Counted from the first letter of the stretch, positions 16,107 through 64,000 are shown. The stretch is 64,000 bases of DNA from Marsupella aquatica (GCA_973895155.1 OZ316897.1:310001-374000), one strand, 5' to 3'. Made by a program: numbers and translations. The notes: generated by a model not told the origin, from the sequence alone.

Positions 16107-16620
16107 CAGCTTTTTACTAAACTACCCCCCAAACTTGTAGTAATTACAATACTGCCCCCAAAACTAATATATTTAGTATACTGCCCCCCTAACCGTATCC
16201 CGTCACTTTTAACCCAAGTACTTGACCACTGCTGCATTCCGATTGGCCAAAAAGTAACCATAGTCGAGATCCTAAGCCCGGCCTTACCACAGTATCATCT
16301 TCGCCCGGGCCCAAGGCGCAACCGTGCTGTGTTCGGAAGTGCCGCGCTCGCATTGGGGATTGGGGCCTGAAGTGGGACAGAGGGATCAGAACCCCACTCA
16401 GACCCTCCGCTTATCGGGCTCCGTGAAGGCGCCTCATTTTCTTTGGGACAAACGACACCCAAAACGTTGTTTTTTAAGCCTCGCCAGTTCACAGTCGATT
16501 GCAAGTGAACGTGAAAGGCAGGCGCAGCGCTGGGAGGCAGGGATCGGGGCACATTACGAGCCATTTTTGGAGAGAGGGATTCAGGCAGAAGGCAAGCCAT
16601 TTTGGGAGTGAGGGATCGGG
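16107..16620 (+). repeat. Left TIR of the MULE (~514 bp; weaker similarity to ~16715)
   Basis: Reverse complement of 29752-30265. The spurious ORF pairs 16295-16600/29772-30077 and 16324-16611/29761-30048 translate almost identically. Confidence 0.95.
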
Positions 16621-17040
16621 GCAGGAGGCATGCATTTTCGGGAGTGAGGGATTGGGACGGAAAGGCTAGCTATTTCAAGAGGGATTGGGCCCTAAAGTTG
16701 AGCAAGAGACGGAGGGACTCGAGTTGCATGCCTCGAGTTGAAGGCCTTGTTCCCGGCCTTGTTGCCTCAAGTTTTTGGGCCTCGTTTTGATTGGGAAAAA
16801 CTGCAGCCAAACAGCTTATTTTTGAAGGTGTGCTGCTCAATCCTGATTGTTCAACGTCAAGGGCAGGCGCTAGGAGAGAGAGAGAGATCGTGTGAAGAGG
16901 CACAGGTGTGATCTCAGAATGCACATTGAATGCACATTCAACTCTCTTTTGCTTGGCATGCATTTCATTCTCATTTTTTGTTGCCTGTGAATTCAGTCTG
17001 TAATGTCTGTGTTGCAGAGTACATTGCAAGTCGAGCAGAC

Positions 17041-18387
17041 ATGGAATTGAAGACTGGGGAAACATTTGAGGTTGGAAAGACCTTAAGAAATTAATTGTTG
17101 ATGAAGGTGTATCCTCTGAGAGACTCCTAGTTACCCACAAGAAGGATGAGTATAAATGGAAGTTAAGATGCAAACAGATTAGTTGTCCGTGGAGGTTGAG
17201 AGCTACAAAAAAAGCCAGAACCGAGACAATTACCATCACAAAAACTTGCTTGAATCACACTTGTGAGCGGGCTGACCATTACAAGAGGCGAATGCACAGC
17301 AGTTCAGATAGGCTTGCAGACAAAATTATGGACTTAATTCTCCAAAATTGTCAAACTCGACCTTCCACCATCCGAGATACTGCTCAGGCATGGGTGCATC
17401 CTGACATAAAATACCATACAGCCTACGCTGCCAAGCATCGATGTTTGAAGCGCCTTGATGGAGATGAACCCTAAACCCTAAACCCTAAACACTGCCATCA
17501 TATACTTGAGAGAGATCCGACAGCAATTGCTAAGTATAGGGCACCGGTGGCCATCTTGACATGTTATTTGTCTGCCCTTCAGCAGCTAGGGAAGCTTTCC
17601 GTCACTATAGGCTGATGATTGCATTAGATGGGACTCACACAAGATGCATGTACCCTGGAATTCTCCTGCTTACCACAACATTGGATGCCAATAACACAGT
17701 TGTATTGCTTGCATACTCTTGGGTACCTTCAGAAAACGAGGCTAATTGGCTGGTCTTCTTGAATTTGCTAAAAGAAGGTATTCCAGACTTGTGTCAACCT
17801 GGAGTGGTTTTTATTTCTGATCGGGAGAAAGGCCTAACTGATGGGGTGCCAGAAGTTTTTCCTTGTGGACATCCTGCCTACTGTACATGGCATCTTGGGG
17901 AGAATGTACACAAGCATTATGGCAAGGAGATCCGTAAGTTGTTTGAAGCTTTACCATATGCTGTCACTCCTGCCAAATACGAAGGTCGCTTGAAGCAAAT
18001 TGAAGAGAAGAACAAAGCAACAGCAGAATACATTCGAAGGACAGCTGACCCAAAGTTCTACTCTCGAGCTTACTTCCCATCTAAAAGGTCAATCAACTAA
18101 TACATGACCTTTCTAAGTATCTACTGCTAGTTGCATATGCATATAGTGGTTCAATTCTAGGTGTTTTGCATAATACTACTTGCCCTTGATGTGCTTGCAT
18201 TCTTGTTATAGGTGGGGACATGAAACCTCGCAGCAAGTAGAGAGTAGTAACAGGGCACTAAAACCTCAGTGACAAGAGGTGACATTGAATATGTCATGCC
18301 AGATCTGGGATTACATGATGGTAAAGTTTTTTGAGAAGCGAGAGCTTGCTGGTAGTATTACGACTCCATTTCCACCAAACATCATGG
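17041..18387 (+). pseudogene. MuDR/MULE transposase, 5' part (disrupted)
   Basis: Zinc-finger-like RCKQISCPWRL..NHTC; catalytic core IALDGTH (D), FISDREKGL (D), YCTWHL (CxxH); intron ~18088-18210; then ETSQQVESSN (E). Frameshift near 17070, telomere-repeat insertion at ~17467, in-frame stop near 18269; cut by the retroelement at 18387. Confidence 0.9.
17467..17490. repeat. Interstitial plant telomere-type repeat (CCCTAAA)x3 inside the transposase CDS
   Basis: AACCCTAAACCCTAAACCCTAAAC directly after codons RLDGDE; it creates the stop at 17472-17474. Confidence 0.85.
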
Positions 18388-18716
18388 TGTCAACCATTCT
18401 GAGTAGTGTAGTAGTATATCGTGCTATTAGAGTATGTATGTTTGGTATGAGTGCTATTGGAGCCGATAAGGTTCTGTCAGGTTTGTGTGAGAGGGTACTT
18501 CTCACTTGTGAGGCATTGAAAGGTCATCTTTCAATGTTGAGCCTTGGAGAGAGAGGAGCTTGAGTGTGGCTATGCTGGCTGTGAGCTCCGCTTGTGTAAC
18601 GTGGATTCCTTGAGTAGTGCAAGGTGCGTTGGCTTGACATACGTGTGTGATCGGATCGGTGCGGGATCGATGGGGTATTGTTGACCGAGATCGTTGTGCC
18701 GATTGTATGGAGATTA
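18388..18716 (+). repeat. Repeat A1 (5' terminal repeat, 329 bp)
   Basis: Matches 27486-27815 with 1 indel and 3 C/T differences by my comparison. Confidence 0.95.
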
Positions 18717-18727
18717 CATTGAAAGAT
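18716..18727 (+). promoter_or_regulatory. Putative self-priming primer-binding site
   Basis: ACATTGAAAGAT at the A1/internal boundary is the exact reverse complement of ATCTTTCAATGT (18526-18537) inside A1. No TGG-starting tRNA PBS is present here. Confidence 0.6.
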
Positions 18728-18986
18728 CACATTCAAAATCTGTTGTACGGACTGTGCGGATAGAAGTTCGATTGATTGAGTTGTCGACGGTTCGTGGTAG
18801 CTCGGATCGTGTGTTGTTATCGAACAGATCGTTGGTATCTTGACCTGTATCATTGTTGTCCGATCGGCCTGCTTCCCGATCGATGTACAGATCTGTGATT
18901 GGTGACAGGTTTTGAGTTGGAGGTCGATTGATGATTCGTGGAGGAAAGCGAATGTTGAGTAGATGTTGGACAGTGGAAGTCGATCC

Positions 18987-19076
18987 GTGAGGCTTCAGAT
19001 CCGATTGCCGGCTACTGTGAGGCTTCAGATCTGATTGTTGGCTACTGTGGGGCTTCAGATCTGATTGTCGGCTATT
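18987..19076 (+). repeat. Three 30-bp tandem repeats in the retroelement leader
   Basis: GTG(A/G)GGCTTCAGATC(C/T)GATTG(C/T)(C/T)GGCTA(C/T)T x3. Confidence 0.85.
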
Positions 19077-19314
19077 GTTGGACGATGTTGGCAAGGCGCA
19101 GGTGAAGCGATGGCTCTTTTCCTGAAGGAACGGAGCTGCCAATGCCCCGTGCGATGGTATCATCGTTTCAGTGAAAGAAACGAGGGTCAAAGGTGTTGAA
19201 TCAAGCTGCTGCCAATTCTGTGGAAGGGCTGCATTTTTCATGAAGGAAATCGACAGTTTTCGGGAGCTTTTCGTGAAAGAAGTAGTCGTTTTTGGGGTCA
19301 GGTGTGAGGCGCAC

Positions 19315-19520
19315 GAGGTCACCCATCCCAAAAGTGCTCGCGCGAGGCGACGCGTGAGGTCACCCATCCCAAAAATGCTCCCAACCGCGAGCGCAAAGTC
19401 ACCCATCGCAAGCGCAGGCAGGCGCGAGGTCACCCATCCCGGGGCTATTCCGGGCCGTGAGCGCGAGGGGAGGCACAAGGTCGAACGCGAGGAGATCACC
19501 CATCCCAGGGCTATTCCCAG
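19315..19520 (+). repeat. Dispersed GTCACCCATCCC-like motif (x5) in the CpG-rich leader
   Basis: Motif copies at ~19315, 19356, 19397, 19426 and 19493. Confidence 0.75.
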
Positions 19521-20076
19521 CCGCGAGCACTTAACTGACAAGTTCTCATCCCACCTTGTGTACACACAAGCTTTGACAACTTGTTGTTTAGATTCAAGCG
19601 CCAGGGGGCTTTATACACTTCCCGGTTTGTTTAGAGGCCTATTCTAGGCCAAATCAGAGGTTGTTTTGGGGTTTTTGATACTTCTGAGTCCATCTAGACT
19701 CATAGATTGAACCAATTTTGCCTTGGTTCTCATCTACAACATTGGAGTGCCATTGTGAAGCTTATTATGAAGGCTCTTCCTTGAACCTTATGCACATTGT
19801 CATATTGATTTGCATTTGCTTTTGTGTGGAGAGTTGAATGGTATCCATTCTTGTTTCTGGATCCTCTTCACACATGTTTCCTATTTATGCGCCATGTTAG
19901 TTTCGTGTGGGCGCTTGATTCCATAGGAGTGATTCGGGTTTGCAACTGGACATTCTAGTGTGCTGTGTATTTCTCTCTTGGTGATGTTGGAGTGATGCCC
20001 AACACACCATGGTGAGTGCTTGTGGTGCTGACAGGGATAGATTGCCCTTAGGGTTAGCACATAGATTAGGTTAGGG

Positions 20077-22856
20077 TTGGTCACCACGGATTCTTCTGGT
20101 GCTGCTGGATTACCCGATGGACGACGGACCAGTTTCACTCGGAGTGGGGCACAATTTCGGCCAGCGGCATTGGTAGCAGTCAGCAGTGCAGCTTCATACA
20201 GTGATTCTGATGAGGACTCAGTGACCAGTTCTCCTCATCATCAGGTGGTTGCACCTTTGTTGTGGGATATGGACGAGATATACGGGGCTACAAAGGGCCC
20301 ATGACGATACTCTGGTGCAGTTGGCACAATTGATCTGGATGACTTCATGCAGGAGTTTGATACGTGGTGCAATATGCAGACATTGCATAACGTCACGTTG
20401 TTTACCCCTTTCATGGCATGGAAGGGATTATTCCAGCATTTGGAGGGGCCACCCATGGATGACTACCATGAGTTTCGGAAGGCTCATTTGGTTGAGATTG
20501 AGGGATGGAGGCAGCATTGGTCGCCTAATTACGTATCCATCACCTATGGCACTAGTGCGGCTACCCAACCCATTGCCACAGCTGCTGCTTCTTCTAGCAG
20601 CACTAGCCAGAGTGGCACACCATCCACCAGCAGCACTCCAGCAGCATCCACCACTACTCCTGCCGGTGTGATTGTGACAGGAACTGGAGTTGCGCCAGCA
20701 TTTAATCCTGTGGTGGAATTCTTTGAGGTACTGAAGCAGAACTATCAGGGTGTGAGAACTGATAAGTTGAAGGGTCTTCAGAATTCCAACGCAAGACTGG
20801 AGAGAGCCTACGTGAGGCATACACACGTATGCGCAGATTGATCACTGTCACCAAGGGAGTGACAGAGGCTCAGGCAGTCCAATTTTGGTATGCAATTCTG
20901 AACAGAGAATTGCGACGCAGAGTGAGAGATGTCACTCTACTTAGGGATGTAGATCCCACATTAGCAGTTGTTTTCACCCTTTCTGAGCGCATTGAGCTCA
21001 ATATGGTGAATGAGAAGGTGGTGACTTCCGGATTTGCCAAGGAAGCACCAAAGACTGCATCTACATCCACACCACAGCCTACCGCACGGAAGAGCCAGAG
21101 GGAGAAGCCTACTGCACGAGAGTCTACCAGCCAGAGACATGTGCCCTCTTATGCTGGACAGCAGTCAGGATGTTGGACCTGTGGTGGGGATCATGCACAG
21201 AGATATTTTCCAGATCATAGAGGATCAGGGGGAGCATCAGCACCTGATCAGCGACAGTGTGATCACTGTGGAGCTCCTGGACACACCAAGGATAGGTGTT
21301 TCTCACTCCACCCTGAGTTACGGAGAGGAGGATCCCGTACACATGATCAGGGAAGAGGAGGAGGAGGTAGAGGTGGTGGATGTGGTCATGGCATGCCACA
21401 TGCAGGGAGACAGGAAGGTGACGCTGCCCCTGCTGTAACCATAGATCCAAAGGATGCTAAGATTGCTCAATTGGAGCAACAACTAGCTGCCATGGCTAGT
21501 TCCCAGGTGAGACCTAATTCTGGTGATGGGGCATCTACATCCTATGGACCTTCCACATCCCATGGTCCTTCCACATCTTATGGAGCTGATGGAGACCTTG
21601 CCACCATGGGATTCATGTGTGGCACTGCACATATTGATGCATCAGCAGCTTTGACACGTGGGGCAGCCAAAGCTCTTGAGCCCCGAGGAGCAGTAGTGGA
21701 GTTAGATCCACAAAGGGGGGATGCACGTCGGCAGACACAGCTTCCTCAGTCTTTTACATTGTCAGAGACAGTTCAGACTGCCTCTATGAACCCGGTTCGG
21801 ACAAACCCTGATGTGGGTAAGTTGGCAGAATCAGGTAGTGATGTAGCAGGGATGACAGGTACCTTGCTGGGGGCGGCTATTGCCATAGTACACACCCCAT
21901 TATTTTCAGCGACAGACATGCTGAACTTGGGAGTTGGTCCTGCAGAAGTGTTCAGATTGGCAGCTACACTCTGTGAGGACACTCCAGTAGTTGCTTCCCA
22001 TGCAAAAGCAACTTGCAGTGTTGATGCAGTGAAGACCATGCCACCTACTGCTACTAGTGAGACATGGCATGCAGCAGCAGCGAGGTTGGTGGATTTACCA
22101 GCACGCCCTGCATTTGAGAGGACTAGGTTTAAACCTAGTGTTGTGTCATTGGATAATCGGAGTGGTATCTTCCGATTAGTTGGACCTTTTGGAGCAGTAT
22201 ACCAGCCAGAGAGAGTGTTACTGGATACTGGTGCTCAGCCCTTGATGTTGGGGAAGTCTGCCATACGTGGATTGGGATTGCGTCTAGAGGATTTGGAGGA
22301 TTGTCCCTTTCCCATTCAAACTTCATTGGGGGGACCTACACCTACACAGCATATCACCAGGAGACCACTTGATTTGAGGATTCAGGAAGGTCATACCACA
22401 GATAGCTCACAGATACAGACGCGAGCTATTCTGACAAAGGCAGAGCCATATGATGTGTTGGTGGGATGTACAGTGCTCTACCCCATGGGATTTATTCTTG
22501 ATTTTTGGGAGGAATCAGTGTCATATAGACCTGATTGGCAGTCAGGAGATGCTCGATTGAGAAAATTGCCAGTGAGATTTAGTGGACCTGTGGGAGGCCC
22601 TAAATCCACACCATTGTCTTTGGCAGCATTCAGTGGTGTAATTGCTGGACTTGATGATTTGATTGAGGGTAATGCGCATGCAGCCGATGTTCCACCATTG
22701 GAGGAGTCTCATGAGGAGCACATCATGCGAGGATTACCTGTTGGCAGTGTTGTGCCACCAGTGTGGGGCACTGCACAGGCCTTGCCACAGGCAGCAGCAC
22801 GATTGGTACATGATGCATGGCATCATGCTTTTACACCACAGTCAGGAGCAGAGTAG
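20077..22856 (+). pseudogene. Retroelement Gag + zinc knuckles + aspartic protease (5' part of a single polyprotein)
   Basis: Gag motif LQEFQRKTGESLREAYTRMRRL after correcting a 1-nt frameshift near 20780; knuckles CWTCGGDH (degenerate) and CDHCGAPGHTKDRC; protease VLLDTGAQ and YDVLVG. In-frame stops at 20302 and 22854. Start codon uncertain. Confidence 0.88.
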
Positions 22857-22874
22857 TCTCTTGCAGATGGACCT

Positions 22875-24065
22875 GTGACTCTTTCACCATTGGATACCAC
22901 TCCTATTGCTTGGCAGTATCCACCGGAGGGTATTTATTTGTTGGATCTTTTTGGTGGGATTAGCACTGGATTGGCTGCTGTTCTTCAGGCAGGAATTCCT
23001 GTGCGTTGTTATTTGTATGTGGAGACAGATGAGACAACACAAAGGGTCTCATTGCGACATGTGGCTATGTTGGTGGATAGATATCCACAGTTGCTGCCAG
23101 TGGATGCTGTTCGTGGTTATCAGCATGCACTACCTGCTGATGTTTCATTGTTGGGGGCGGATCATCTACATCGTGTTGGCCCCATTAATTTGGTGATTGC
23201 TGGTTGGCCATGTCAGGGCCAATCTAGAGCTGGCATTGGGCATGGACTTCATGATCCACGCTCTGCATTGTTTTGGGAGATGTTACGGGTGCTGCGTCAT
23301 CTCCAGCTACATCAAACACAGTCTCCAACATACATTTTGGAGAATGTGCCATTGTTAGGTGATGATCGTAGTCGGATTGTTGCAAGTGTTCACCAAGTGA
23401 GGTCTTGGATTGGACCTGCTGTGTTATTGGATGTTGCACGTGTGGGTTCTCGTGCACATCGTCCACGCTTGTGGTGGACTAATTTGATCCCATGTGAGGT
23501 GCTGAAGCGCGCATTTGACAGCATTCCACGCTCACCAGCCTTAGTGGTGGATGATATTTTGGATCCAGGGCGTCGTGCACAGGGTGTGACCCAACCTGAT
23601 AGGCCTCCATTGGCAATGGTCCATGCAGTTGGGTGCCCACGTTGTGCATTACCCACTCTTGTAAGCCACTCTACTTCATATGCATTCAGAGCAGGTGGCC
23701 CTGGACTTGTATGGGACACAGCTCTCCAGCAGTTAGTGGAGCCTACTGCTGATGAGAGAGAGCGTGCTATGGGATTTTTGACTGGCACCACTGCAGCTGC
23801 CTCTGTGTCAGAGGGTTTGCGGCGCCAGGTTCTTGGTCAAGCAATGGATTTGAATTGTTTGACTTGGATTATCAGCTTGGGAGTAGCTGAACAGTTGCGG
23901 ATGCGCTCTGCCGGAATTACTGATTGTCCCTTGGTGAGCTTGCGGTCCACTGAGATAGTATTGACCATAGCTGGGGGCGAGCAGACAGTCCATGGACCTA
24001 TGACAGGATTGGCGGCTGGACAGATTGTTGAGCAGGAAGGGACTGCTCAATCTACTGCTAAATAG
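22875..24065 (+). CDS. C5 cytosine DNA methyltransferase domain (DNMT3/DRM-like motifs, unpermuted order), in frame between protease and RT
   Basis: Motif I LDLFGGISTG (F at 22950); II YVETD; IV LVIAGWPCQG (catalytic Cys 23211-23213); V LFWEMLRVL; VI ILENV (23340-23348); VIII AHRPRLWWTNL; IX ERERAMGF; X RQVLGQAM. Same reading frame as ORFs 20829-22856 and 24111/24399. Confidence 0.95.
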   Translation: MTLSPLDTTPIAWQYPPEGIYLLDLFGGISTGLAAVLQAGIPVRCYLYVETDETTQRVSLRHVAMLVDRYPQLLPVDAVRGYQHALPADVSLLGADHLHRVGPINLVIAGWPCQGQSRAGIGHGLHDPRSALFWEMLRVLRHLQLHQTQSPTYILENVPLLGDDRSRIVASVHQVRSWIGPAVLLDVARVGSRAHRPRLWWTNLIPCEVLKRAFDSIPRSPALVVDDILDPGRRAQGVTQPDRPPLAMVHAVGCPRCALPTLVSHSTSYAFRAGGPGLVWDTALQQLVEPTADERERAMGFLTGTTAAASVSEGLRRQVLGQAMDLNCLTWIISLGVAEQLRMRSAGITDCPLVSLRSTEIVLTIAGGEQTVHGPMTGLAAGQIVEQEGTAQSTAK

Positions 24066-24110
24066 CAATCATCGGCTATCTCTTCTACCCTACAAAGAGA
24101 TATTAGGGAT

Positions 24111-25840
24111 TTGGTGGAGAGTTGGGAACCACAGCTTGGCCCTAAGTTAACAGGGGAGGAGAGACGTCGCATGCATCGATTCCTGAAGAGTTATTGGAAT
24201 TGTTTTGCATTCAGCATGAAGAATTTGGGGACATTGAAGGGCCCTCGTATTCAGATTGAATTGGCTAGTGATGCGCCAATCTTTCGTAGACCATACCGTT
24301 ATAGTGATATGGAGAGAGCTCTGATTCAAAGCAGAACTCAAGATTTGTTGGAGGCTGGATTGGTGGAGATTTCATAAGGGGAGTATGCATCTGCCACAGT
24401 GATGCCAGCCAAGAAAGATGTGCATGGCAATTACACAGATAGGCGCATGTGTGGTGATTACAGACCTATTAATCGCCAGACAAAATCTGATCGATATGCC
24501 ATGCCCACACCTGAGGAGATCTTTGATGTTGTGGGGCATGCAAAGGTTTTCAGTTCATTGGATCTGAGGGCAGGATACCATCAGCTTCCAATTAGGCATG
24601 CTGACAGGTCCAAGACAACATTCTGGGGGATTGATTCTTATGGCAAAGATCGTTTGTATCAATGGTTATTCTCACCATTTGGGTTGAAGAATGCACCAGC
24701 TGAGTTCCAGAGAGTCATGGATCGAATCCTTGTAGGTTTGGATTTTGTCAGATGTTATATTGATGATATTTTGGTCTATTCTTCTACTGTGGAAGAACAT
24801 CAGCAACACTTGCAGACTGTGTTGGAGAGATTGAGAGCACATGGGTTGAAGCTCCATCCTAGCAAGTGTAAGTTCTTCCAAGACCAGATTGAGTATTTGG
24901 GCCACACCATATACCCAGGGGGATTGGGTGTACAGCAGACTAAAGTGGAGGCCATTACACAGATTCCTTGTCCTACTGATGTGAGTAGAGTTCGTGCATT
25001 CTTGGGATTGGCGAGCTACTACAGGAGGTATGTTAAAGGATTTAGCCAGCTTGCTAAACCTTTGACCATACTCACTAAGTTGGATCAGGAATGGATTTGG
25101 GGTGATGACAAGGAGCATGCCTTTCAGGAGTTGAAGCAAAGGTTGGCATCATCCCCTATTTTGAGAAGACCCATTTCAGGCAGACCATTTCAGCTACACA
25201 CTGATTGGAGTGGAGTAGGACTTGGAGCAGTGCTGACTCAGAAGGATGATGAGGGGAATGAGTTTGTTGTGGCTTATGCCAGTAGATCAAACAATTCAGC
25301 AGAGGCTAAGTATAGCTCTTATGAGGGAGAGTGTTTGGCAGCAGTGTGGGCTGTTGCACACTTTCGTTGCTACTTGTTTGGTAACCCCTCACCTTGATCA
25401 CTGATCATCAGCCTCTTAAGTGGTTAATGGAGTCTGACAAGCTTACAGGGAAGCTTGCACGATGGGCATTGTTGTTACAGGAGTATGATTTCCAGGTGGT
25501 GCATAGGCCTGGAAAAGTGAACTTGGATGCAGATGGATTAAGCCGCAATCCATGTACCAGTCAGCAGGATGAGACTGCAGCCAGATGGCATGATGAGTCA
25601 GATAAGGAGATGGTGCCAGGATGGCATGCATCTGACTTTCTTTGTTGGGTGCCAGCATACAGTGGATCTGTGGACTCTACCTCATTAGATGGAGTGGATG
25701 ATGAGTCTTCAGATGTGGATGTTGGTGAGGTAACTTCTGGACAGCAAGATATTCACAATGATGTGAGAGTGTTGGAATATCTGCGCAATAGTTCTATTGT
25801 TGGCAGTGTTGATGCCAAGGAACGTGACAGGGTTCTATAG
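24111..25840 (+). pseudogene. Reverse transcriptase + RNase H
   Basis: RMCGDYRPIN, LDLRAGYHQL, PFGLKNAPAEFQ, YIDDILVYS; RNase H LHTDWS, YEGECLA, TDHQPL, DADGLSR. Stop at 24375, 1-nt frameshift near 25390, stop at 25838. Confidence 0.97.
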
Positions 25841-25876
25841 AGAGCCAAGAGGTTTCGATGGGAGGGAAACCATCTT

Positions 25877-26830
25877 TTGAGAGTACTGCATGATGGTAGG
25901 ATGTTGGTGGTACCAAAACCATCACAACGAGTACATTTGGTGCGACATGCGCACGAGGAGTTGGGTCACTTTGGTGTGAAGCGCACTTACAGCTTGCTGC
26001 AGACACAGTATTGGTGGCGTGGTATGCACACTCATGTCCAGCAGTTGATAGCTAAGTGTGTGGTATGTGACAGAGTGAGAGCATCATTTAATGCTCCCAC
26101 TCCCCAGTTGCACCCGTTACCGATCATGGGTTTGGGATATCGTTGGAGTTTGGATTTTGCTGGTCCATTACCTCTTACCCAACGTCATAATCGGTATGTT
26201 TTGGTCATGGTGGAGCACTTCTCCAAGTGGATTGAGCTAGTGGCGTTGCCAGATAAAGCCAGTGGAGGAGTTGCTGCTACATTTTTGGATCGTGTACTCA
26301 GTCATTTTGGAGCACCAGCTGAGGTGTTGACTGATCAGGGAACTGAGTTCCGTGGAGAGTTTGAGAGTTTGTGTGAACAAGCTCTGATTGATCATTGCAC
26401 TACCTCTTGTGATCATCCTGAGGCAGATGGATTAGCTGAGAGAGTTGTGCAAACTGTGAAGAGAGGATGGCAAAAGTATCTGGGAGATTGGGATCTCCAG
26501 CTACCTTGGTTAGTTATGGGCTACCAGTTCAGTCGGCAAGCATCACTTGCATCCTTCTCACCCTACTTTTTGCTCTATGGTAGAGAGCCAGATTTGCCAG
26601 CAGCTATTCGTCGTCATGCTGCACCAGTTGTGAACTTGGATGATCCTGATGTTTGGGTCAAGGTGTGTTCAGAGAGAGCACGGGTATTTCATAGAGTGAT
26701 GTCCATGGCTTTTGACAACCTTGCCATTGCCCAACATCGTGATACTTTGAGGTATGCCACTATTTGTGGAGGAGGTTACCGTGCAAGCATTCGACGATTT
26801 CATCCTGGTGATTATGTTTATTTGCAGTAG
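25877..26830 (+). pseudogene. DDE integrase (rve) with HHCC zinc finger
   Basis: HEELGH...CVVC; SLDFAGP (D), LTDQGTEF (D), GLAERVVQTVK (E). In-frame stop at 26828. Confidence 0.96.
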
Positions 26831-26839
26831 ACAGCACCC

Positions 26840-27172
26840 ATGACACTTGATGTGACCGCAGGCCGGACAATCTTACGTGTGCGTGAAGTGTTGCCTTTTG
26901 GTGTCCTGATGTTGGAGGGACGCGATGGTATGGTTTGGAAGGATCATGTGCGCAACTGTGCACCATGTCACCTTCCCAACATTGATGGTACAGTAGATCC
27001 AAGCTTGGCACATGTTCGTGCTGGCTTGAAATGTATGTTGTGTGGATCTGCTCAAGGAGCAGCTACTATGTTGATTTGTGATAAGTGTTCTAGAGGATGG
27101 CACATGTCATGTTTGACACCACCATTGCAAGTGATTCCTAGTGGATCATGGTTGTGTCCTCAGCGTCGGTGA
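26840..27172 (+). pseudogene. Integrase C-terminal tail ending in a PHD finger
   Basis: CMLC..MLICDKCSRGWHMSCLTPPLQVIPSGSWLCPQR fits C4HC3 with the last Cys changed to Arg (CGT). In frame with the integrase across one TAG. Confidence 0.9.
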
Positions 27173-27336
27173 AGCCGACTAGTTATCATTTGTGTTCTCT
27201 TGGCAGATATGGATTGCAGGTAGGTGATCGATGAGGCTCACTTGCACCCGGCCTCCTGATCTTCACACCTAAAAAGGTGTATATCAACCTTGTAGAACTC
27301 ATGGCTAGCTAGAGTTAGGGGACCTTACTCCCAGCT

Positions 27337-27343
27337 AGGGGGG
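27337..27343 (+). promoter_or_regulatory. Short polypurine tract-like run preceding repeat B1
   Basis: AGGGGGG followed by CGAT and then the TGTGGG start of B1 at 27348. Confidence 0.5.
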
Positions 27344-27347
27344 CGAT

Positions 27348-27952
27348 TGTGGGTTTTGGACATGTGTGGACATGAGTTCCACTTGTATTCCATTCTCTTG
27401 TATTTGTGATGTGACAGTGTGACTATGTCTGGATGTATGTGACAAGCGATGTATGTTGTGTAGCGATATGTATGCGCACGACAGCTGTCACACCATTCTG
27501 AGTAGTGTAGTAGTATATCGTGCTATTAGAGTATGTACGTTTGGTATGAGTGCTATTGGAGCCGATAAGGTTCTGTCAGGTTTGTGTGAGAGGGTACTTC
27601 TCACTTGTGAGGCATTGAAAGGTCATCTTTCAATGTTGAGCCTTGGAGAGAGAGGAGCTTGAGTGTGGCTATGCTGGTTGTGAGCTCTGCTTGTGTAACG
27701 TGGATTCCTTGAGTAGTGCAAGGTGCGTTGGCTTGACATACGTGTGTGATCGGATCGGTGCGGGATCGATGGGGTATTGTTGACCGAGATCGTTGTGCCG
27801 ATTGTATGGAGATTATTGTGGGTTTTGGACATGTGTGGACATGAGTTCCACTTGTATTCCATTCTCTTGTATTTGTGATGTGGCAGTGTGACTATGTCTG
27901 GATGTATGTAACAAGCGATGTATGTTGTGCAGCGATATGTATGCGCACGACA
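27348..27952 (+). repeat. 3' repeat block B1-GC-A2-T-B2
   Basis: B1 27348-27483 and B2 27817-27952 (136 bp each, 3 transitions apart); A2 27486-27815; B1/A2 junction GACA-GC-TGTC. Confidence 0.95.
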
Positions 27953-28600
27953 ATGGAAGCGCTAAATGAGGTGGAAGTTAAAGCTAGTCGTCTCATTGCA
28001 CATCCTTCCCATGATACTGAGGTCAGAATCACTAATGACTGCAATAGACAGTACATAGTGAACCTTGAGTCACCTTGGTCATGCAGTTGTGGTGATTTCC
28101 AGGATACATTGTTGCCTTGTATACATGCTTGGCGAGCAATTACTAGACTACGCAAACGTCACTATGATTTTGTCAGTCCCTACTACAGCACAGAGTCATA
28201 CAAAAATATTTATGACTCTCATCTACCAGCTTTGATAAGAGATGGGCTAATTCCAAATCCATATTGTGGGCCTCCACTGAAGAAAAGACGCAAAGGTCGT
28301 CTGACAGAGCGGATTCGGACTCGCTTTGATGATGAGGAGGTATGTCGGTTGCCACGAAAGTGTGGGGTTTGTGGAGAAAGAGGACATGACTGCAGAAATT
28401 GTCCAGACCAAAATGAATTGCAAGTCGTGCAAAATTTGGAAGAAGGGAGTGAATTGGGAGACATGGTGGAAGAACATTGTGTTGCTGAAGAGGAGGCCAA
28501 TCAAACTGTACAAGAGTGGAGTTCACAGGAGAGCATCGCCCTTTGGAACTTTTTCTCAGTTGCTAGCTACCATGGAGAGTCAACCATCAACATTTACAAC
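27953..28600 (+). pseudogene. MULE transposase, 3' part (SWIM finger and zinc knuckle)
   Basis: MEALNEVEVK..YIVNLESPWSCSCGDFQDTLLPCIHAW (SWIM), VSPYYSTESYKNIY, PPLKKRRKGR, RKCGVCGERGHDCRNC. The ORF runs to 28852; the true 3' end is uncertain. Confidence 0.9.
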
Positions 28601-28923
28601 TCCTTAGTTGGCCCAAAATGGTTCTATTTTAGTGTTCTCAATGTTATATTTAGTTTAGTTTCACAGTCCGATTTACTTTCGGACTTCAGTATACAACTTT
28701 TTGTATCCAGGTCTGTACGATGCTCAAATTTTGTAACTTGTTACAAGTTGATGGCAATTCAATTGAATTTTTTTGGCCACAGTTCATGTTCAGACACATA
28801 CAATGTAACAATTCACACTGGACAGAAGCACAATAGCACATTTTATTCATAGATTGGGCACTTGGGCATTACAGCAAGTGTGATTCATGAACACAATTGG
28901 AAGGCTATGTAATCAATGTTGCA

Positions 28924-29460
28924 CTAACATTTAGTCCGCCTAATACGCATCAATCCATCCTGCAAATATGCCAAAGCTTCCTGTCGAGTCTTGAAACTCT
29001 TAAACTTGCATCCGCTGAAGCCATGGACCTGGTGTTGACATGCCTCCCATGTATCATAGATGCCTGGTGTATACCCACACACAACTGCATAGTATCGTCG
29101 CCTCTGCCCAGGATGCCATGATTGAATCTGTTCATTTGGCAAATGCCTCGACTTTGCATCCATATCCTGAGTCACAGGTTCCTGTGTTGCAGTATGTGGG
29201 AGCACAGGCTGCACCGGCTGCACAATTGGCATACACAATGCTTCAGTGTCTACCAACTTTGATTGCATTGACATCCGTGGAGGCATTGCTACTGCTACAG
29301 GGGCTGCTTGCTCCCTGGATGATAGCAACCAGACCTGCAATTTGTCTTGGCCGAGCTGCATTGCGTCAGAGACAAGGCAAAAAATGTATCCAAGCACCAC
29401 AAGCAAGGCCCAAATGCATATTGCAAGCACCCTGATAATGGTTCGAGTCCCTGGCACCAT
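28924..29460 (-). CDS. MULE accessory ORF: hydrophobic segment plus RNase H1 N-terminal hybrid-binding (Caulimovirus viroplasmin VI-like) domain
   Basis: RRRYYAVVCGYTPGIYDTWEACQHQVHGFSGCKFKSFKTRQEALAYL (~28960-29105) fits the YAV..G..PG(I/V)Y.TW..C...V.GF.G..FK.F.T..EA..(F/Y) consensus. Upstream IIRVLAICIWALLVVLGYIFCLVS. Likely ATG at 29460; convergent with the transposase. Confidence 0.8.
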   Translation of the reverse strand: MVPGTRTIIRVLAICIWALLVVLGYIFCLVSDAMQLGQDKLQVWLLSSREQAAPVAVAMPPRMSMQSKLVDTEALCMPIVQPVQPVLPHTATQEPVTQDMDAKSRHLPNEQIQSWHPGQRRRYYAVVCGYTPGIYDTWEACQHQVHGFSGCKFKSFKTRQEALAYLQDGLMRIRRTKC

Positions 29461-29751
29461 TGCTTTAATCAATGTCCCTCCCTTGCTAAGCTTTAGGGCC
29501 CAATCTCTCGCTTCCAAATGAGTTGCCTTTCTGCCCCAAGCCCTCTGTCCTGAAAATGCTCGCCTCCTGCCCCGACCCTCTCTCCTGAAATAGCTCACCT
29601 CTGCCCCGATCCTTGCTCACAAAATGGCTCGCCTTCTGCCTGAATCCCCCTCTCCAAAAATGGCTTGCAGTGTGCTCCGATCCTTACTCCTGAAAATGCT
29701 CACCTCTGCCGGCCCTGATCCCTCTCTCGTTCAATCCCCTTCTCCTTCTGT

Positions 29752-30265
29752 CCCGATCCCTCACTCCCAAAATGGCTCGCCTTCTGCATGAATCCCCCTC
29801 TCCAAAAATGGCTCGCAATGTGCCCCGATCCCTGCCTCCCAGCGCTGCGCCTGCCTTTCAAACTCACTTGCAATCGACTGTGAACTGGCAAGGCTTAAAA
29901 AACGACGTTTTGGGTGTCGTTTCTCCCAAAGAAAACGAGGCGCCTTCACAGAGCCCGATAAGCGGAGGGTCCGAGTGGGGTTCTGATCCCTTTGTCCCAC
30001 TTCAGGCCCCAATCCCCAACGCGAGCGCGGCACTTCCGAACGCAGCACGGTTGCGCCTTGGGCCTGGGCAAAGATGATACTGCGGTAAAGCTGGGCTTAG
30101 GATCTCGACTATGGTTACTTTTTGGCCAATCGGAATGCAGCAGTGGTCAAGTACTTGGGTTAAAAGTAACGGGATACGGTTAGGGGGGCAGTATACTAAA
30201 TGTATTAGTTTTGGGGGCAGTATTGTAATTACTACCAGTTTGGGGGGTAGTTTAGTAAAAAGCTG
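29752..30265 (-). repeat. Right TIR of the MULE, preceded by ~30-bp subterminal repeats (29490-29751)
   Basis: Reverse complement of 16107-16620. CCCGATCCCTC..AAAATG(G)CTC(G/A)CCT(T)CTG units are repeated inward. Confidence 0.95.
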
Positions 30266-60095: not shown

Positions 60096-61798
60096 CCATT
60101 ATTGTACGTGTCCATTGGTTGCCCATGTATGCAGGAAGGCAATCCCTCCTTGTCGGGCTTTTTACTTTGATTATCTTTGGCCACTAATTAAGTATACAAA
60201 TTACTGGCCAGACACACTCCTAAACTTCAACTTTAGGTGGCTTTAGGATGATAGAGTCTAGCAGCAAACCTTCTAGTACACCATAAGTTAAAAATTGAGC
60301 CTCACACAACATTGCTCTGAAAAGTTGTTTGTTTGAACATGTTAAAGTAATATTGAACATGTAAAAATAACAAGAGAAAAAAAAATTAAAGTTGTCTCTA
60401 GGATAGACGACAATGTTTGACCTGAGGACTACGATGGACAAGCATTCATTTAACACCCAAAAAAGCCAATATTGATATAAAGAGAATGTTTTGGTTATCT
60501 GAGGAAACCCTAAACCCTAAACATTCAGCTAATGAAAATATTGAAAAAACTTGCAATAGAACTAATATAGTGCACTACAATTAATCAAATCATGACATTG
60601 GTGTGATGGCGTCTGCTCCCGATGTAAATCACGCTTTAATTTGAGCACATTGAACATATATTCTTTGGCTGGAGCAAAGTGATTGAGCGGTGGAGGGGAA
60701 GTGACTCTGCTATTGCACAGTTCCGTTGCCCTCAAGACACACAACAGTTCTCTGTAGGATCGAGGCCATTATTTACCTTTGATATTTAGTGACATATATA
60801 AGAGAAAACCCAGGCTACTGCTTCTTCTGATGAAAATGTGGAGCAACATCTGGCCTGGACAGAGACAAATGAAGCTATTGATTCCCAATTTCTGGGAAGG
60901 CTCCCAGGCTAGGTGATTCTTCGCCAAACTGAAACTCACTTGAACTCCATGTTGAATATGTGCAGATAGACCACAAAAAGCAGCAGATCCAAGGCACTCT
61001 AAGTTGAAGAACTACATATTGTTCTCCTACCCTGCGAGAAGACTAACAGCCCAATTTCCCTCATCACTAATGCCAATGATGTGTAAACAGTGTGGGGATG
61101 CTGGCCTTTCACAGGAGACATAAACCACAGCTGCACATATTGAAGCTATGGGTTATGCAAGCTCTCAATATACAAAGCACATTGAGTTGCACAATGAGTG
61201 GAGAGCACAATTAGTCAGCTCCACCTTTTACGATCAGGTGCACTATTCACTACTAACAGCAGAAACTAGTATGTGGGTCCAGCTCAATTCTTTCACGTAA
61301 ATTATATAGCCAAAGTACATTCAAAGGAGTGTTGTAAATTTGTATTAAATTTATGTGCATTAAATTAAATTTATAAGAATGACATCAAAAGCTCATCTAC
61401 AATAACAAGAGTATGCCATAAGAAAATTGATGGCTTGGATTGAGCCATTAGCTATAACTATCTGTAATACGATCTTGGGCAACTTAGTTTGAAGATTCAA
61501 TTTGTTAATATATACTAGTAAAAGAAAATTCTCATCATTATCCTAATATCATGGCAAGTGGAAACAAATACAAAAACCATAAGTGTAGAATCATCACAAA
61601 GTGTTGTGGAGAGAGAGGTTATATATATATAGACCAACTTTCATGGGAATATGAACACTCATTTCCTTGCATGATTCGATGTAGATTCTATAATAAATTA
61701 TACTTTATGATGTTATTTGTCTTATTATTTAATGTAACTTTCTATATTATGTGGATTAATAACTCTAATAAACTGAACAAAAATAGGTTGGATAGAAG

Positions 61799-63544: not shown

Positions 63545-63860
63545 ATGATGCACACATTTGCAAGTGTACTTTTTGACCCCAATTGTAATTCTAAAATTAA
63601 TAAGGTTACAAGTTAAGGCATTCTGGTGCACACATCCGCAAGGGTCGGTATACTGTTTGACCCCAATTGTAACTTTGAAATTGATAAGGTTACAAGTTAA
63701 GGCATTCTGGTGCACACATCCGCACGGGTCGGTGTACTGTTTGACCCCAATTGTAACTTTAAAATTGATAAGGTTGCAAATTGAAATTCTTTAGTGAACA
63801 CATCCTTAAGGGTTGGTGTAATGTTTGACCCCAATTGTAACTTTAAAAGCATTTGATAAG
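63545..63860. repeat. 84-bp tandem repeat, ~3.5-4 copies
   Basis: TTGACCCCAATTGTAA recurs at 63573, 63657, 63741 and 63825 (period 84). Confidence 0.9.
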
Positions 63861-64000
63861 GTACAGGAAACTTTTGAAAATTCCCAACACTAAATTAATA
63901 TCATCTGAACATATTTTTTCATCACCATTTTTTCATAATTAAAAACTCAAAGACATGACCTAAATTATGAATGTGGCTTTGACTTACTCAACTTAGGTAA

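What the first reader, a model, noticed from the sequence alone, without database searches (positions are those of the whole stretch)
18388..27952. Candidate system: self-priming, split-repeat Gypsy retrotransposon carrying both a chromatin writer (DNMT3-like MTase) and a reader (PHD)
Seen: one element, bounded by a 4-bp TSD, combines (i) a polyprotein Gag-CCHC-PR-C5 MTase-RT-RH-IN-PHD, (ii) A...B-A-B split repeats with a DDE integrase and no tyrosine recombinase, and (iii) a self-complementary primer site. Known, from memory and to be verified: Dnmt-carrying Gypsy elements were reported in the charophyte Klebsormidium, PHD-bearing Gypsy elements in Chlamydomonas (REM1), split direct repeats in Ngaro/PAT tyrosine-recombinase elements, and self-priming in Tf1-type elements. 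I do not know of all four together in a land-plant-like genome. Inference: the element may package its own methyltransferase, methylate its cDNA or target locus, and choose targets through the PHD finger.
Basis: partly seen in the sequence, partly recalled or inferred. Interest (0 to 1): 0.95.

Follow-up and report, generated by a model that had tools for sequence, protein, structure and literature searches.

The report
Liverwort Gypsy-DNMT3 retrotransposon with permuted repeats
This is a real but decayed copy of a jumping gene that carries its own DNA-methylating enzyme; the type is already known from a green alga, and its odd end repeats look as if the element inserts from a closed DNA circle cut open at an internal site.

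Summary
Window 18388-27952 is one retrotransposon with TG...CA ends and a 4-bp duplication (ATGG). It sits inside a MULE transposase gene whose reading frame closes when the element is removed. Repeats are A1...B1-GC-A2-B2. Coding order is Gag-CCHC-PR-DNMT3-like MTase-RT-RH-DDE integrase-PHD, with no tyrosine recombinase.

It is not unprecedented. KnitGypsy-Dnmt3 of Klebsormidium nitens (de Mendoza 2018) already combines Dnmt3 in a Gypsy Pol with "DIRS-like" A-coding-B-A-B repeats. The window comes from a leafy liverwort close to Calypogeia. The same architecture, with 4-bp duplications, recurs in Calypogeia fissa and Sphagnum. Riccia has the B-NN-A-B end, and Marchantia an A-int-B form with its own duplication.

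Three things are new here:
- A 12-nt Tf1-type self-primer site that covaries between species.
- A conserved leaky-stop motif (UAG-CAA-YYA), so MTase is made with Gag-PR, and RT-RH-IN-PHD only by readthrough.
- Repeat boundaries that fit a reverse-transcription LTR of B-NN-A. The A2|B2 joint is then a blunt LTR-LTR circle junction, and the element ends come from integrase cutting an internal CA-NN-TG site. This is inferred, not shown.

This copy is dead: four premature stops, two frameshifts and a lost PHD cysteine. MTase and PHD functions are untested.

The parts
18384..18387 (.). Left copy of the 4-bp target-site duplication (ATGG)
   Evidence: The same 4 bases lie at 27953-27956. Removing the element plus one copy restores the MULE-SWIM reading frame.
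18388..18715 (+). Repeat A1. It starts with TGTCA. By inference it holds the promoter, R and U5 of the reverse-transcription LTR.
   Evidence: It is 98.8% identical to A2. Its right boundary abuts the primer-binding site.
18514..18537 (+). Hairpin CATTGAAAG-gtcat-CTTTCAATG inside A1. Bases 18526-18537 (ATCTTTCAATGT) form the self-primer segment, followed by the conserved TGAGCC.
   Evidence: The equivalent segment in L001, L008, L006 and L004 covaries with its own primer-binding site.
18716..18727 (+). Primer-binding site for Tf1-type self-priming (ACATTGAAAGAT), directly 3' of A1
   Evidence: perfect 12-nt complement by reading; 6 of 5000 shuffles reach the 11-nt exact core scored; the minimum-energy fold pairs the two segments, though the fold was started at the complementary segment.
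18728..20304 (+). Untranslated leader. It holds a 30-bp tandem repeat (18987-19078) and about five copies of a GAGGTCACCCATCCC motif (19310-19528).
   Evidence: No Pfam match on any ORF here.
20305..20838 (+). N-terminal part of Gag. In this copy it is in a different frame from the rest (frameshift near 20830).
   Evidence: It is 50-58% identical to the same region of L001, L005, L006 and L007. In L001 and L005, where I checked the coordinates, it is in frame with the rest of Gag.
20829..22856 (+). Gag C-terminal part with the CCHC knuckle (21258-21299) and the aspartic protease (DTGA 22224-22235). It ends at a premature TAG (22854).
   Evidence: Relatives have Gly, Gln, Arg or Val at the position of the stop.
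22875..24062 (+). C5 cytosine methyltransferase, DNMT3-like. Motifs: I (FGG 22950), IV (PCQ 23208), VI (ENV 23340), VIII (RPRLWWTN 23460), IX (MGF 23769), X (23832).
   Evidence: PF00145, E=7.8e-10; the best solved relatives are DNMT3A, 3C and 3B, with motifs in the normal order; dN/dS is 0.11-0.20 against relatives.
24063..24071 (+). In-frame UAG-CAA-UCA, a candidate programmed leaky stop between the Gag-PR-MTase unit and RT-RH-IN-PHD
   Evidence: TAG.AA.C is invariant in 9 bryophyte copies, in a linker that is otherwise 64% identical. It matches the UAG_CAR_YYA readthrough motif (PMC3542737).
24111..25397 (+). Conserved linker, reverse transcriptase (YIDD 24756) and the first part of RNase H. 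There is a premature TAA at 24375.
   Evidence: Relatives have His or Tyr at 24375 (Glu in L004).
25394..25840 (+). Rest of RNase H and a linker, shifted in frame. It ends at a premature TAG (25838).
   Evidence: relatives have CAA or CAG (AAG in L004). RT and RH are in one frame in L007.
25877..26830 (+). DDE integrase: HHCC zinc domain (25952-26068), D (26150), D (26330), E (26432). It ends at a premature TAG (26828).
   Evidence: Most relatives have CAG or CAA at 26828 (CAT in L005, CGC in L004, TAG also in L001).
26840..27172 (+). Integrase C-terminal region plus the PHD finger (27032-27163). The last zinc-binding Cys is replaced by Arg in this copy.
   Evidence: PF00628, E=4.5e-11.; relatives end in CPxC; dN/dS is 0.08-0.17.
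27333..27345 (+). Polypurine-like tract AGCTAGGGGGGCG, directly 5' of B1. Inferred plus-strand primer.
   Evidence: Conserved in Calypogeia, Riccia, Sphagnum and Marchantia copies. B always starts right after it.
27346..27483 (+). Repeat B1. It starts ATTG and ends CGCACGACA. Its last 44 nt are conserved across liverworts and mosses.
27480..27489 (+). GACA-GC-TGTC, the B1/A2 joint: inverted element ends separated by 2 bp. Inferred uncut integrase site.
   Evidence: CGACA-NN-TGTCA is also present in L001, L007, L008, L009 and the distant L004. Sphagnum L134 has TGACA-GC-TGTCA in the same place. NN is GC, AC, GT, GT or GC.
27486..27814 (+). Repeat A2
27815..27952 (+). Repeat B2, ending CGACA at the element's right end. 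The A2|B2 joint (27814/27815) is the last base before the primer-binding site joined to the first base after the purine tract.
   Evidence: The same exact joint occurs in L001, L007, L008, L009 and L134.
27953..27956 (.). Right copy of the target-site duplication (ATGG)

Best explanation
Identity (shown). The region is a dead copy of a bryophyte lineage of the Gypsy-DNMT3 retrotransposons. Its repeats have diverged by 1.3%. It is nested in a MULE DNA transposon in the genome of a leafy liverwort close to Calypogeia.

How the family works:
1. Transcription starts inside A, about 140 nt in. This is inferred.
2. The first ~12 nt of the RNA fold back onto the complementary site directly after A1 and prime minus-strand DNA, as in Tf1. 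The complementarity and its covariation are shown. The priming itself is inferred.
3. Plus-strand DNA starts at the purine tract in front of B1. The LTR that reverse transcription builds is therefore B-NN-A, and the linear cDNA is [B-NN-A]-internal-[B-NN-A].
4. The two blunt cDNA ends are joined into a 2-LTR circle. This creates the A|B joint.
5. The DDE integrase cuts after CA on both strands of the CA-NN-TG inverted repeat inside the LTR that precedes the primer site. This gives CA-3'OH ends with 2-nt overhangs, which insert with a 4-bp duplication.
6. The genomic copy is then A-internal-B-NN-A-B. Steps 3 to 6 are inferred from the exact repeat boundaries.

Translation. Gag-PR-MTase is the main product. 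A leaky UAG lets a fraction of ribosomes continue into RT-RH-IN-PHD. The motif is conserved; readthrough itself is inferred.

Accessory domains. Both the MTase and the PHD evolve under purifying selection, so the element needs them. The most likely roles, by analogy only, are methylation of the element's own cDNA or insertion site, and chromatin-guided integration through the integrase-fused PHD.
For: Identity and boundaries.

Host: the makorin gene at 52777-53784 is 92% identical to Calypogeia fissa, against 54-59% to Marchantia and Riccia.

The architecture recurs, each time with its own 4-bp duplication:
- Window: ATGG.
- C. fissa L001: AATG.
- Sphagnum L134: ATTC.
- Marchantia L006: AATT, in the A-int-B form.
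- The B-NN-A-B end is also present in L007, L008 and Riccia L009.

Self-primer pairs are perfect 12-mers that differ between copies by compensatory changes:
- Window: ACATTGAAAGAT / ATCTTTCAATGT.
- L001: ACTTGGAGAACT / AGTTCTCCAAGT.
- L008: ACTTGAAGAACT / AGTTCTTCAAGT.
- L006: ACTCGAAGAACT / AGTTCTTCGAGT.
- L004: a 15-mer, with a TATAAATA box ~30 nt upstream.

Boundary logic. In the three copies with A1 and a complete 3' end that I read for this (window, L001, L008), A ends exactly where the primer site begins. In every copy read, B begins exactly after the purine tract. The A2|B2 joint is exactly those two ends abutted.

Integrase site. CGACA-NN-TGTCA is conserved even in L004, which shares only 43-56% protein identity in MTase, RT, RH, IN and PHD.

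Precedent. Retroviral integrases cleave palindromic 2-LTR junctions (PMC1905944 and PMC1180852; titles and abstract openings only).

Readthrough motif.

Selection.

DNMT3 likeness.

Published family: PMC5890265.
Against: - No circle, transcript start, poly(A) site or integrase activity was observed. Steps 3-6 rest on sequence boundaries in seven or eight copies.
- The model predicts a second isomer, A-B-NN-A-internal-B, from cutting the other LTR. None was seen among the six copies whose 3' ends could be read. I could not survey a whole genome for it.
- The A|B joint is precise in 6 of 6 copies. That is tidier than end-joining usually is, so a templated route is possible.
- dS is near saturation, so the dN/dS values are rough.
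- The K. nitens MTase was inactive in yeast (inconclusive).
- The moss copies have UAG-CAA-CCC, which matches the readthrough motif only in part.
- No K. nitens sequence could be retrieved. Relatedness to the published family rests on shared architecture, not on an alignment or tree.
Confidence: 0.6

Rival explanations
1. DIRS-like route. The RNA runs from A1 to B2. The A2|B2 joint is inherited through the RNA. The cDNA is closed into a circle by templated synthesis across the internal B1-NN-A2 segment, which acts like the internal complementary region of DIRS elements. The integrase then cuts the newly made B2-NN-A1 joint.
For: - The repeat order is that of Ngaro/PAT/DIRS-type elements, as de Mendoza et al. 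remark.
- The A|B joint is precise in all copies, as a templated or inherited joint would be.
Against: - It gives no reason why A should end exactly at a primer-binding site and B begin exactly after a purine tract. Ordinary LTR formation predicts both.
- There is no tyrosine recombinase.
- 4-bp duplications are present.
Confidence: 0.15
2. Linear route without a ligated circle. Reverse transcriptase itself makes A-internal-B-NN-A-B by an extra template switch, for example between two packaged RNAs. The integrase then acts on ordinary linear ends.
For: - TG...CA ends and a 4-bp duplication are what a linear substrate gives.
- A few bases are shared between the start of B and the start of the primer site: A(CA)TTG in the window and A(C)TTGG in L001. 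These could guide a switch.
Against: - I could not derive a priming scheme that places a minus-strand start at the end of B2. The only sequence that follows a B inside the RNA is NN-A2.
- The A|B joint contains both full ends with no overlap. That looks like ligation rather than homology-guided switching.
Confidence: 0.15
3. The split repeats are an accident of this locus: a nested insertion, a solo repeat next to a truncated element, or a misassembly. The MTase is a captured host fragment in a single chimeric copy.
For: No second copy exists in the window for comparison.
Against: - The same order, the same internal site and independent 4-bp duplications occur in other species, with unrelated A sequences.
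- The MTase occupies the same position in all copies and is under purifying selection.
- The empty site closes to an intact reading frame.
Confidence: 0.02

Closest known systems
KnitGypsy-Dnmt3 of Klebsormidium nitens (de Mendoza et al. 2018, PMC5890265)
   Same: - A non-rearranged Dnmt3-type MTase inside the polyprotein of a Gypsy LTR retrotransposon.
- Repeats arranged A-coding-B-A-B 'as in DIRS'.
- MTase under purifying selection (they report Ka/Ks < 0.2; here 0.11-0.20).
   Different: - The host is a land plant (liverwort, with relatives in mosses), not a charophyte alga.
- The paper's text does not mention a PHD finger, a self-priming site, target-site duplications, a readthrough stop or any mechanism for the repeats.
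- Direct sequence relatedness was not tested, because no K. nitens sequence could be retrieved.
Tf1/sushi group and plant Tcn1 clade (self-priming Ty3/Gypsy elements; Neumann et al. 2019, PMC6317226)
   Same: The primer-binding site lies next to U5 and is complementary to a segment about 190 nt upstream, where the transcript is expected to start. No tRNA-type site is present.
   Different: - Those elements have ordinary paired LTRs, and most carry a chromodomain. This one has split repeats and a PHD.
- Clade membership was not tested.
DIRS / Ngaro / PAT tyrosine-recombinase retrotransposons
   Same: Split direct repeats in the order A1-internal-B1-A2-B2.
   Different: From my own knowledge, those elements use a tyrosine recombinase and make no target-site duplication. 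This element has a DDE integrase, TG...CA ends and 4-bp duplications.
Retroviral 2-LTR circles cut by integrase at the palindromic LTR-LTR junction (foamy virus, HIV-1; PMC1180852, PMC1905944)
   Same: Two integrase recognition ends lie back to back (CA-spacer-TG) and can be opened by integrase to give insertion-competent ends.
   Different: - In retroviruses the site is created by joining the LTR ends. Going by those papers' titles and abstracts and my own knowledge, the route is a side path or is debated.
- Here the site lies inside the LTR, the joined LTR ends are left uncut, and the circle would be obligatory.
REM1 and other PHD-bearing retrotransposons of Chlamydomonas; chromoviruses
   Same: A chromatin-reader domain fused to the C-terminus of the integrase. 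In chromoviruses, reader-guided integration is the accepted function of the chromodomain (as cited in PMC6673714).
   Different: - The REM1 paper could not be read here.
- Binding specificity of this PHD is unknown.
- No chromodomain is present.
Type I stop-codon readthrough (tobamovirus UAG_CAR_YYA) and gag-UAG-pol readthrough of gammaretroviruses
   Same: An in-frame UAG followed by CAA-YYA, upstream of the polymerase genes.
   Different: The stop lies after the MTase rather than after Gag or PR, so the MTase belongs to the abundant upstream product. Not tested experimentally.

Membership tests
Ty3/Gypsy LTR retrotransposon | Domain order PR-RT-RH-IN with a DDE integrase | tested here: met
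   RVT_1, RT_RNaseH_2, Integrase_H2C2 and rve occur in that order. YIDD, HHCC and the D, D, E residues are present.
Ty3/Gypsy LTR retrotransposon | TG...CA termini and a short target-site duplication | tested here: met
   TGTCA...CGACA flanked by ATGG. Three further duplications in relatives.
Ty3/Gypsy LTR retrotransposon | Two identical long terminal repeats, one at each end | tested here: not met
   The left end is A only and the right end is B-GC-A-B. By inference the reverse-transcription LTR (B-NN-A) is present whole once and split once.
Gypsy-DNMT3 (KnitGypsy-Dnmt3) | Non-rearranged Dnmt3-type MTase inside the retrotransposon polyprotein | tested here: met
   Motifs I, IV, VI, VIII, IX and X are in the normal order, and DNMT3A/3C/3B are the best solved matches. 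The MTase lies between PR and RT in all bryophyte copies.
Gypsy-DNMT3 (KnitGypsy-Dnmt3) | Repeats arranged A-coding-B-A-B | tested here: met
   compared with the Fig. 4c legend of PMC5890265.
Gypsy-DNMT3 (KnitGypsy-Dnmt3) | Common descent with the K. nitens copies (RT and MTase trees) | not tested
   No K. nitens protein or locus surfaced, and no reference set was on hand.
DIRS / Ngaro / PAT | Tyrosine recombinase | tested here: not met
   No Phage_integrase or any other hit on any ORF of either strand.
DIRS / Ngaro / PAT | Split direct repeats | tested here: met
Tf1-type self-priming elements | A site next to U5 complementary to the start of the transcript | tested here: met
   12-nt perfect complements with compensatory changes in four copies and a 15-mer in L004. 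The transcript start itself was not observed.
Tf1-type self-priming elements | RNase H cut that releases the primer; membership of the Tf1/sushi/Tcn1 clade | not testable with these tools
   Needs biochemistry and a reference RT/IN tree (REXdb or Repbase), neither available here.
DNMT3 methyltransferases | Catalytic motifs including PC (IV) and ENV (VI), with closest similarity to DNMT3 | tested here: met
   DNMT3A E=1.6e-9. DRM and bacterial M.HaeIII score far weaker.
DNMT3 methyltransferases | PWWP or ADD reader domains next to the catalytic domain | tested here: not met
   Pfam finds only the catalytic domain in this piece. The only reader domain in the element is the PHD at the far C-terminus.
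PHD finger | C4HC3 zinc-binding pattern | tested here: inconclusive
   PF00628, E=4.5e-11. This copy has 7 of 8 ligands: CPQR where L001, L005-L008 and L004 have CPxC or CAPC. The family has the full pattern, but this copy is defective.
Type I programmed readthrough | UAG followed by CAR-YYA | tested here: met
   Window TAG CAA TCA at 24063. The motif is conserved in liverwort copies, and the mosses have CAA CCC. Readthrough itself cannot be tested here.

The most novel reading that the evidence does not exclude
This lineage of DDE-integrase retrotransposons inserts only by way of a 2-LTR circle. The integrase recognition ends lie back to back inside the LTR (CA-NN-TG). Linear cDNA is then not a substrate until its ends are joined, and every genomic copy is a circular permutation of the cDNA that preserves an LTR-LTR circle junction. 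That would be a third integration logic, between ordinary LTR elements and DIRS-type elements. It would also be a natural system in which circle-junction integration, long debated for retroviruses, is the rule. In addition, the MTase would be made at Gag levels, upstream of a leaky stop, which suggests it is a particle component that acts on the cDNA.
Probability: 0.45. Interest if true: 0.85.

Novelty: new member of a known kind. Interest (0 to 1): 0.6.

Why it matters
- Range. The methyltransferase-carrying Gypsy family described in one charophyte alga is also present in land plants: liverworts and Sphagnum. Relatives are widespread in green algae. One Marchantia copy is annotated as a gene (Mp_7g09570).
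- Repeats. The exact repeat boundaries give a concrete, testable explanation for why a DDE-integrase element has 'DIRS-like' repeats. They are the footprint of a circle junction and an internal integrase site.
- Consequences if correct. Annotation tools that expect paired LTRs will misdescribe these elements. Retrotransposon circles would be productive intermediates here rather than dead ends.
- Translation. The conserved leaky stop places the MTase in the Gag-PR unit. That bears on whether the enzyme is packaged.

Tried and rejected
Repeat models rejected:
1. LTR = A-B, with a 5' LTR that lost B. The purine tract precedes B1, not A2, and the same 'loss' recurs in every species.
2. LTR = B alone, with the start of A as primer site. 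This predicts B-A-internal-B. It also ignores the covarying primer site found after A1.
3. A tRNA-type primer site after A1 (TGGAGA...). The candidate differs between copies at stem positions, and part of it lies inside A.

Searches that led nowhere:
4. A metagenome scan with CGCACGACANNTGTCAC gave 120 stretches. All were chance matches, with no protein or B-end similarity. They were not used further. One came from a human-gut metagenome contig and was not examined.
5. Looking for K. nitens sequences through three cluster look-ups and two homology searches found Closterium, Scenedesmus, Monoraphidium and bryophytes, but not Klebsormidium.
6. The REM1 paper is not held.

Loci too degraded to use:
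7. Sphagnum L005, metagenome L130, Marchantia L002 and Closterium L003 were too broken or too distant to score the repeat structure.

Not done:
8. No RT/IN tree against REXdb or Repbase, because no reference sequences were available.
9. No genome-wide copy census, because the host assembly cannot be searched with these tools.
Stops were read through only as X inside one script.

Full report
**1. What is in the window**

A repeat search and a self-BLAST find two pairs of direct repeats.
- A1 (18388-18715) and A2 (27486-27814) differ by three substitutions and one 1-bp indel.
- B1 (27346-27483) and B2 (27815-27952) differ by three substitutions.
- All six substitutions are transitions.
- The order is A1-internal-B1-GC-A2-B2.

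The element starts TGTCA and ends CGACA, and is flanked on both sides by ATGG. Upstream lies an ORF with a MULE transposase domain. Downstream lies one with a SWIM zinc finger. Removing 18388-27956 in a script joins the flanks into one uninterrupted reading frame that reads straight through the joint. The boundaries and the 4-bp duplication are therefore real. The MULE itself has 522-bp inverted ends at 16107-16628 and 29744-30265. No second copy of the element is in the window.

**2. Coding content**

Pfam and motif searches give the following.
- A Gag region with one intact CCHC knuckle (21258-21299) and one degenerate one.
- A protease with DTGA (22224-22235). The Pfam match is weak (E=0.011).
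- A C5 methyltransferase (22875-24062).
- RT with YIDD, then RNase H.
- An integrase with HHCC and the D, D, E residues.
- A C-terminal PHD finger (27032-27163).

The N-terminal part of Gag is 20305-20838. It is conserved in relatives but out of frame in this copy. No ORF on either strand matches a tyrosine recombinase or anything else.

The best solved relatives of the MTase are DNMT3A, 3C and 3B (E=1.6e-9). Motifs I, IV (PCQ), VI (ENV), VIII, IX and X are in the normal order.

The best solved relatives of the PHD are CHD4 PHD2, DPF3 PHD2, ATXR5, PHF21A, KDM5 PHD1, AIRE and UHRF1. From my own knowledge these mostly read the unmodified histone H3 tail. The acidic residues they use are not clearly conserved here, so I draw no conclusion about specificity.

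**3. State of this copy**

The copy is dead.
- Premature stops lie at 22854, 24375, 25838 and 26828. At the last two positions most relatives have CAA or CAG.
- Frameshifts lie near 20830 and 25394.
- The last PHD cysteine is Arg, where the relatives whose 3' ends are readable have CPxC.

The repeats differ by 1.3%, so the insertion is fairly recent. I give no age because I have no rate for this plant.

**4. Host**

A makorin-type gene at 52777-53784 is 92% identical to Calypogeia fissa, 59% to Riccia and 54% to Marchantia. The window therefore comes from a leafy liverwort close to Calypogeia.

**5. What is already known**

De Mendoza et al. 2018 (PMC5890265) describe KnitGypsy-Dnmt3 in Klebsormidium nitens.
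- Dnmt3 sits inside the Pol of a Gypsy element and is under purifying selection.
- The Fig. [quoted passage not shown]
- They propose self-methylation of cDNA.
- Their yeast assay of the K. nitens MTase showed no activity. They call this inconclusive.
- The text mentions no PHD, primer site or mechanism for the repeats.

A 2026 preprint speaks of 'streptophytes (Gypsy-DNMT3)'.

**6. Relatives**

The MTase piece has 242 cluster representatives at E<1e-30, many inside 1,000-3,400-residue polyproteins.
- Named relatives are from Calypogeia fissa, Marchantia, Riccia, Sphagnum, Closterium, Scenedesmus and Monoraphidium.
- Many of these polyproteins carry both DNMT and PHD.
- In some, the MTase lies between RNase H and integrase instead of before RT.
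- One metagenome protein (P0424, 2358 residues) has PR-MTase-RT-RH-IN-PHD in a single open frame.

I fetched loci around several of these. The full A...B-NN-A-B structure with its own 4-bp duplication is present in two of them:
- C. fissa L001, duplication AATG.
- Sphagnum troendelagicum L134, duplication ATTC.

The B-NN-A-B end is present in C. fissa L007 and L008 and in Riccia L009.

Marchantia L006 overlaps the annotated gene Mp_7g09570. It is an A-internal-B form that lacks RT-RH, and its duplication is AATT. It could be a B1/B2 recombinant or a direct product.

The architecture is therefore a family trait, not a chimera.

**7. Self-priming**

Directly after A1 lies a 12-nt sequence that is the perfect reverse complement of a segment about 140-190 nt into A. 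That segment is followed by a conserved TGAGCC.
- Window: ACATTGAAAGAT / ATCTTTCAATGT.
- L001: ACTTGGAGAACT / AGTTCTCCAAGT.
- L008: ACTTGAAGAACT / AGTTCTTCAAGT.
- Marchantia L006: ACTCGAAGAACT / AGTTCTTCGAGT.

The pairs differ from one another by compensatory changes. Only 4-6 of 5000 shuffles reach the exact 11-nt matches scored for the window and L008. The L001 run, scored with a mis-set A1 boundary, found 9 nt, reached by 50 of 5000 shuffles. The distant L004 has a 15-nt pair, with a TATAAATA box about 30 nt upstream of the primer segment. Sphagnum L134 has 13-14 of 15. Folding the RNA from the primer segment to the site pairs the two, but I chose the start point, so this is not independent evidence.

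This is the arrangement known for Tf1 and predicted for the plant Tcn1 clade (PMC6317226). Priming itself is inferred.

**8. Explaining the split repeats**

Three boundaries are exact in every copy read.
- B always begins right after a conserved purine tract (...AGCTAGGGGGGCG).
- A always ends right before the primer site.
- The A2|B2 joint is exactly those two ends abutted, for example GGAGATT|ATTGTGGG in the window.

In ordinary reverse transcription the primers define the LTR ends. The LTR that the enzyme builds is therefore B-NN-A, and A|B is what a blunt LTR-LTR circle junction looks like.

The B1-NN-A2 joint reads CGCACGACA-NN-TGTCAC. These are the two element ends in inverted orientation, separated by 2 bp. 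NN is GC, AC, GT, GT and GC in five copies, and L134 also has GC. The site is conserved even in L004. Cutting after CA on both strands of such a site gives CA-3'OH ends with 2-nt overhangs. These are the usual integrase substrate, and the NN is lost from the ends, as observed.

A 2-LTR circle opened at the site in the LTR that precedes the primer site gives A-internal-B-NN-A-B. Retroviral integrases are reported to cut palindromic 2-LTR junctions (PMC1180852 and PMC1905944; I saw only titles and abstract openings). I therefore propose that genomic copies are circular permutations of the cDNA. This is inferred from boundaries only.

Weak points of the model:
- No second isomer was seen in six readable 3' ends.
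- The A|B joint is uniformly precise.
- No genome-wide census was possible.

**9. A conserved leaky stop**

The TAG at 24063 is not decay. In an alignment of the MTase-RT linker from nine bryophyte copies, TAG.AA.C is invariant while the rest is 64% identical. In the seven relatives whose coordinates I compared, the codon is in frame with the downstream RT region; in Sphagnum L134 and L005 the MTase hits upstream lie in another frame.
- The liverwort copies read TAG-CAA-YCA, which fits the UAG_CAR_YYA readthrough motif (PMC3542737).
- The mosses read TAG-CAA-CCC.
- L001 has a mutated TAG-TAA.

The likely products are Gag-PR-MTase as the main protein and Gag-PR-MTase-RT-RH-IN-PHD by readthrough. 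The algal-type L004 has one open frame instead.

**10. Selection**

Against seven relatives, dN/dS is as follows.
- MTase: 0.11-0.20.
- PHD: 0.08-0.17 against bryophyte copies and 0.22 against L004.
- RT: 0.06-0.09.
- Integrase: about 0.05-0.06.

Synonymous sites are near saturation, so these values are rough. Both accessory domains are clearly constrained.

**11. Function of MTase and PHD**

Nothing here tests it. By analogy with the proposal of de Mendoza et al., and with chromodomain-guided integration, the likeliest roles are methylation of the element's own cDNA or new insertion site and chromatin-guided target choice. The one insertion in this window is inside another transposon. That fits targeting of silent chromatin, but it is a single case.

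**12. Verdict**

- The element is a new (bryophyte) member of a published kind.
- Three additions were not described in the papers I could search: the covarying self-primer site, the conserved leaky stop, and a boundary-based model in which a DDE integrase opens a 2-LTR circle at an internal site.

Noticed in passing
window 16107-16628 and 29744-30265 (inverted), with ORFs 17561-18100, 18279-18387 and 27957-28852: The retrotransposon is nested in a MULE DNA transposon of about 4.6 kb without the insert. The MULE has 522-bp terminal inverted repeats (95% identical) and a MULE-SWIM transposase frame that closes when the insert is removed.
   Followed up: partly
window 28924-29598 (-): An ORF of 224 residues with an RNase H1 N-terminal (Cauli_VI) domain lies on the opposite strand, inside the right part of the MULE.
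   Followed up: no
L004 (ENA ERZ25067493, contig ctg159469_5x_c), whole locus: A related element with an intact 2358-residue polyprotein is assembled as internal-LTR-internal-LTR-internal. The period is 8262 bp at 99.8% identity, with a single B-GC-A unit between internal regions and no A|B joint. It could be a genomic tandem array or an assembled circular form. The contig name ends in _c.
   Followed up: partly
window 27440-27483 against L009 13916-13958 and 14359-14401; also L005, L134, L130: The last 44 nt of B are 95-98% identical between the window and Riccia, and 75-86% to C. fissa and Sphagnum copies, although the rest of A and B cannot be aligned between these species. This points to a strongly constrained cis element next to the integrase site.
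   Followed up: partly
L006 10001-12660 (Marchantia polymorpha AP019872.1, gene Mp_7g09570): The gene annotated 'PHD-type domain' lies within a deletion derivative of this retrotransposon family. The derivative has Gag-PR-MTase joined to integrase-PHD, without RT or RNase H, and has its own AATT duplication.
   Followed up: partly
window 52777-53784 (+): An open frame of 335 residues encodes most of a makorin-type CCCH/RING E3 ligase, 92% identical to the Calypogeia fissa protein. It was used only to place the host.
   Followed up: yes
window 61765-62664 and 63508-63862: Diverged tandem repeats (73-84% identical) carry long ORFs on both strands. None of the ORFs tested matches Pfam.
   Followed up: no
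window 18987-19078 and 19310-19528: The leader of the element holds a 30-bp tandem repeat (3 copies) and about five spaced copies of a GAGGTCACCCATCCC motif. Their function is unknown.
   Followed up: no
L005 7934-8710, 13938-14589 (inverted) and 16910-17661; L130 3715-4535, 13441-14259 and 16976-17652: A dispersed repeat of about 700 bp (69-75% identical among copies) sits at or inside the moss-type copies of the element, and obscures both ends of L005. It is unrelated to A or B.
   Followed up: no
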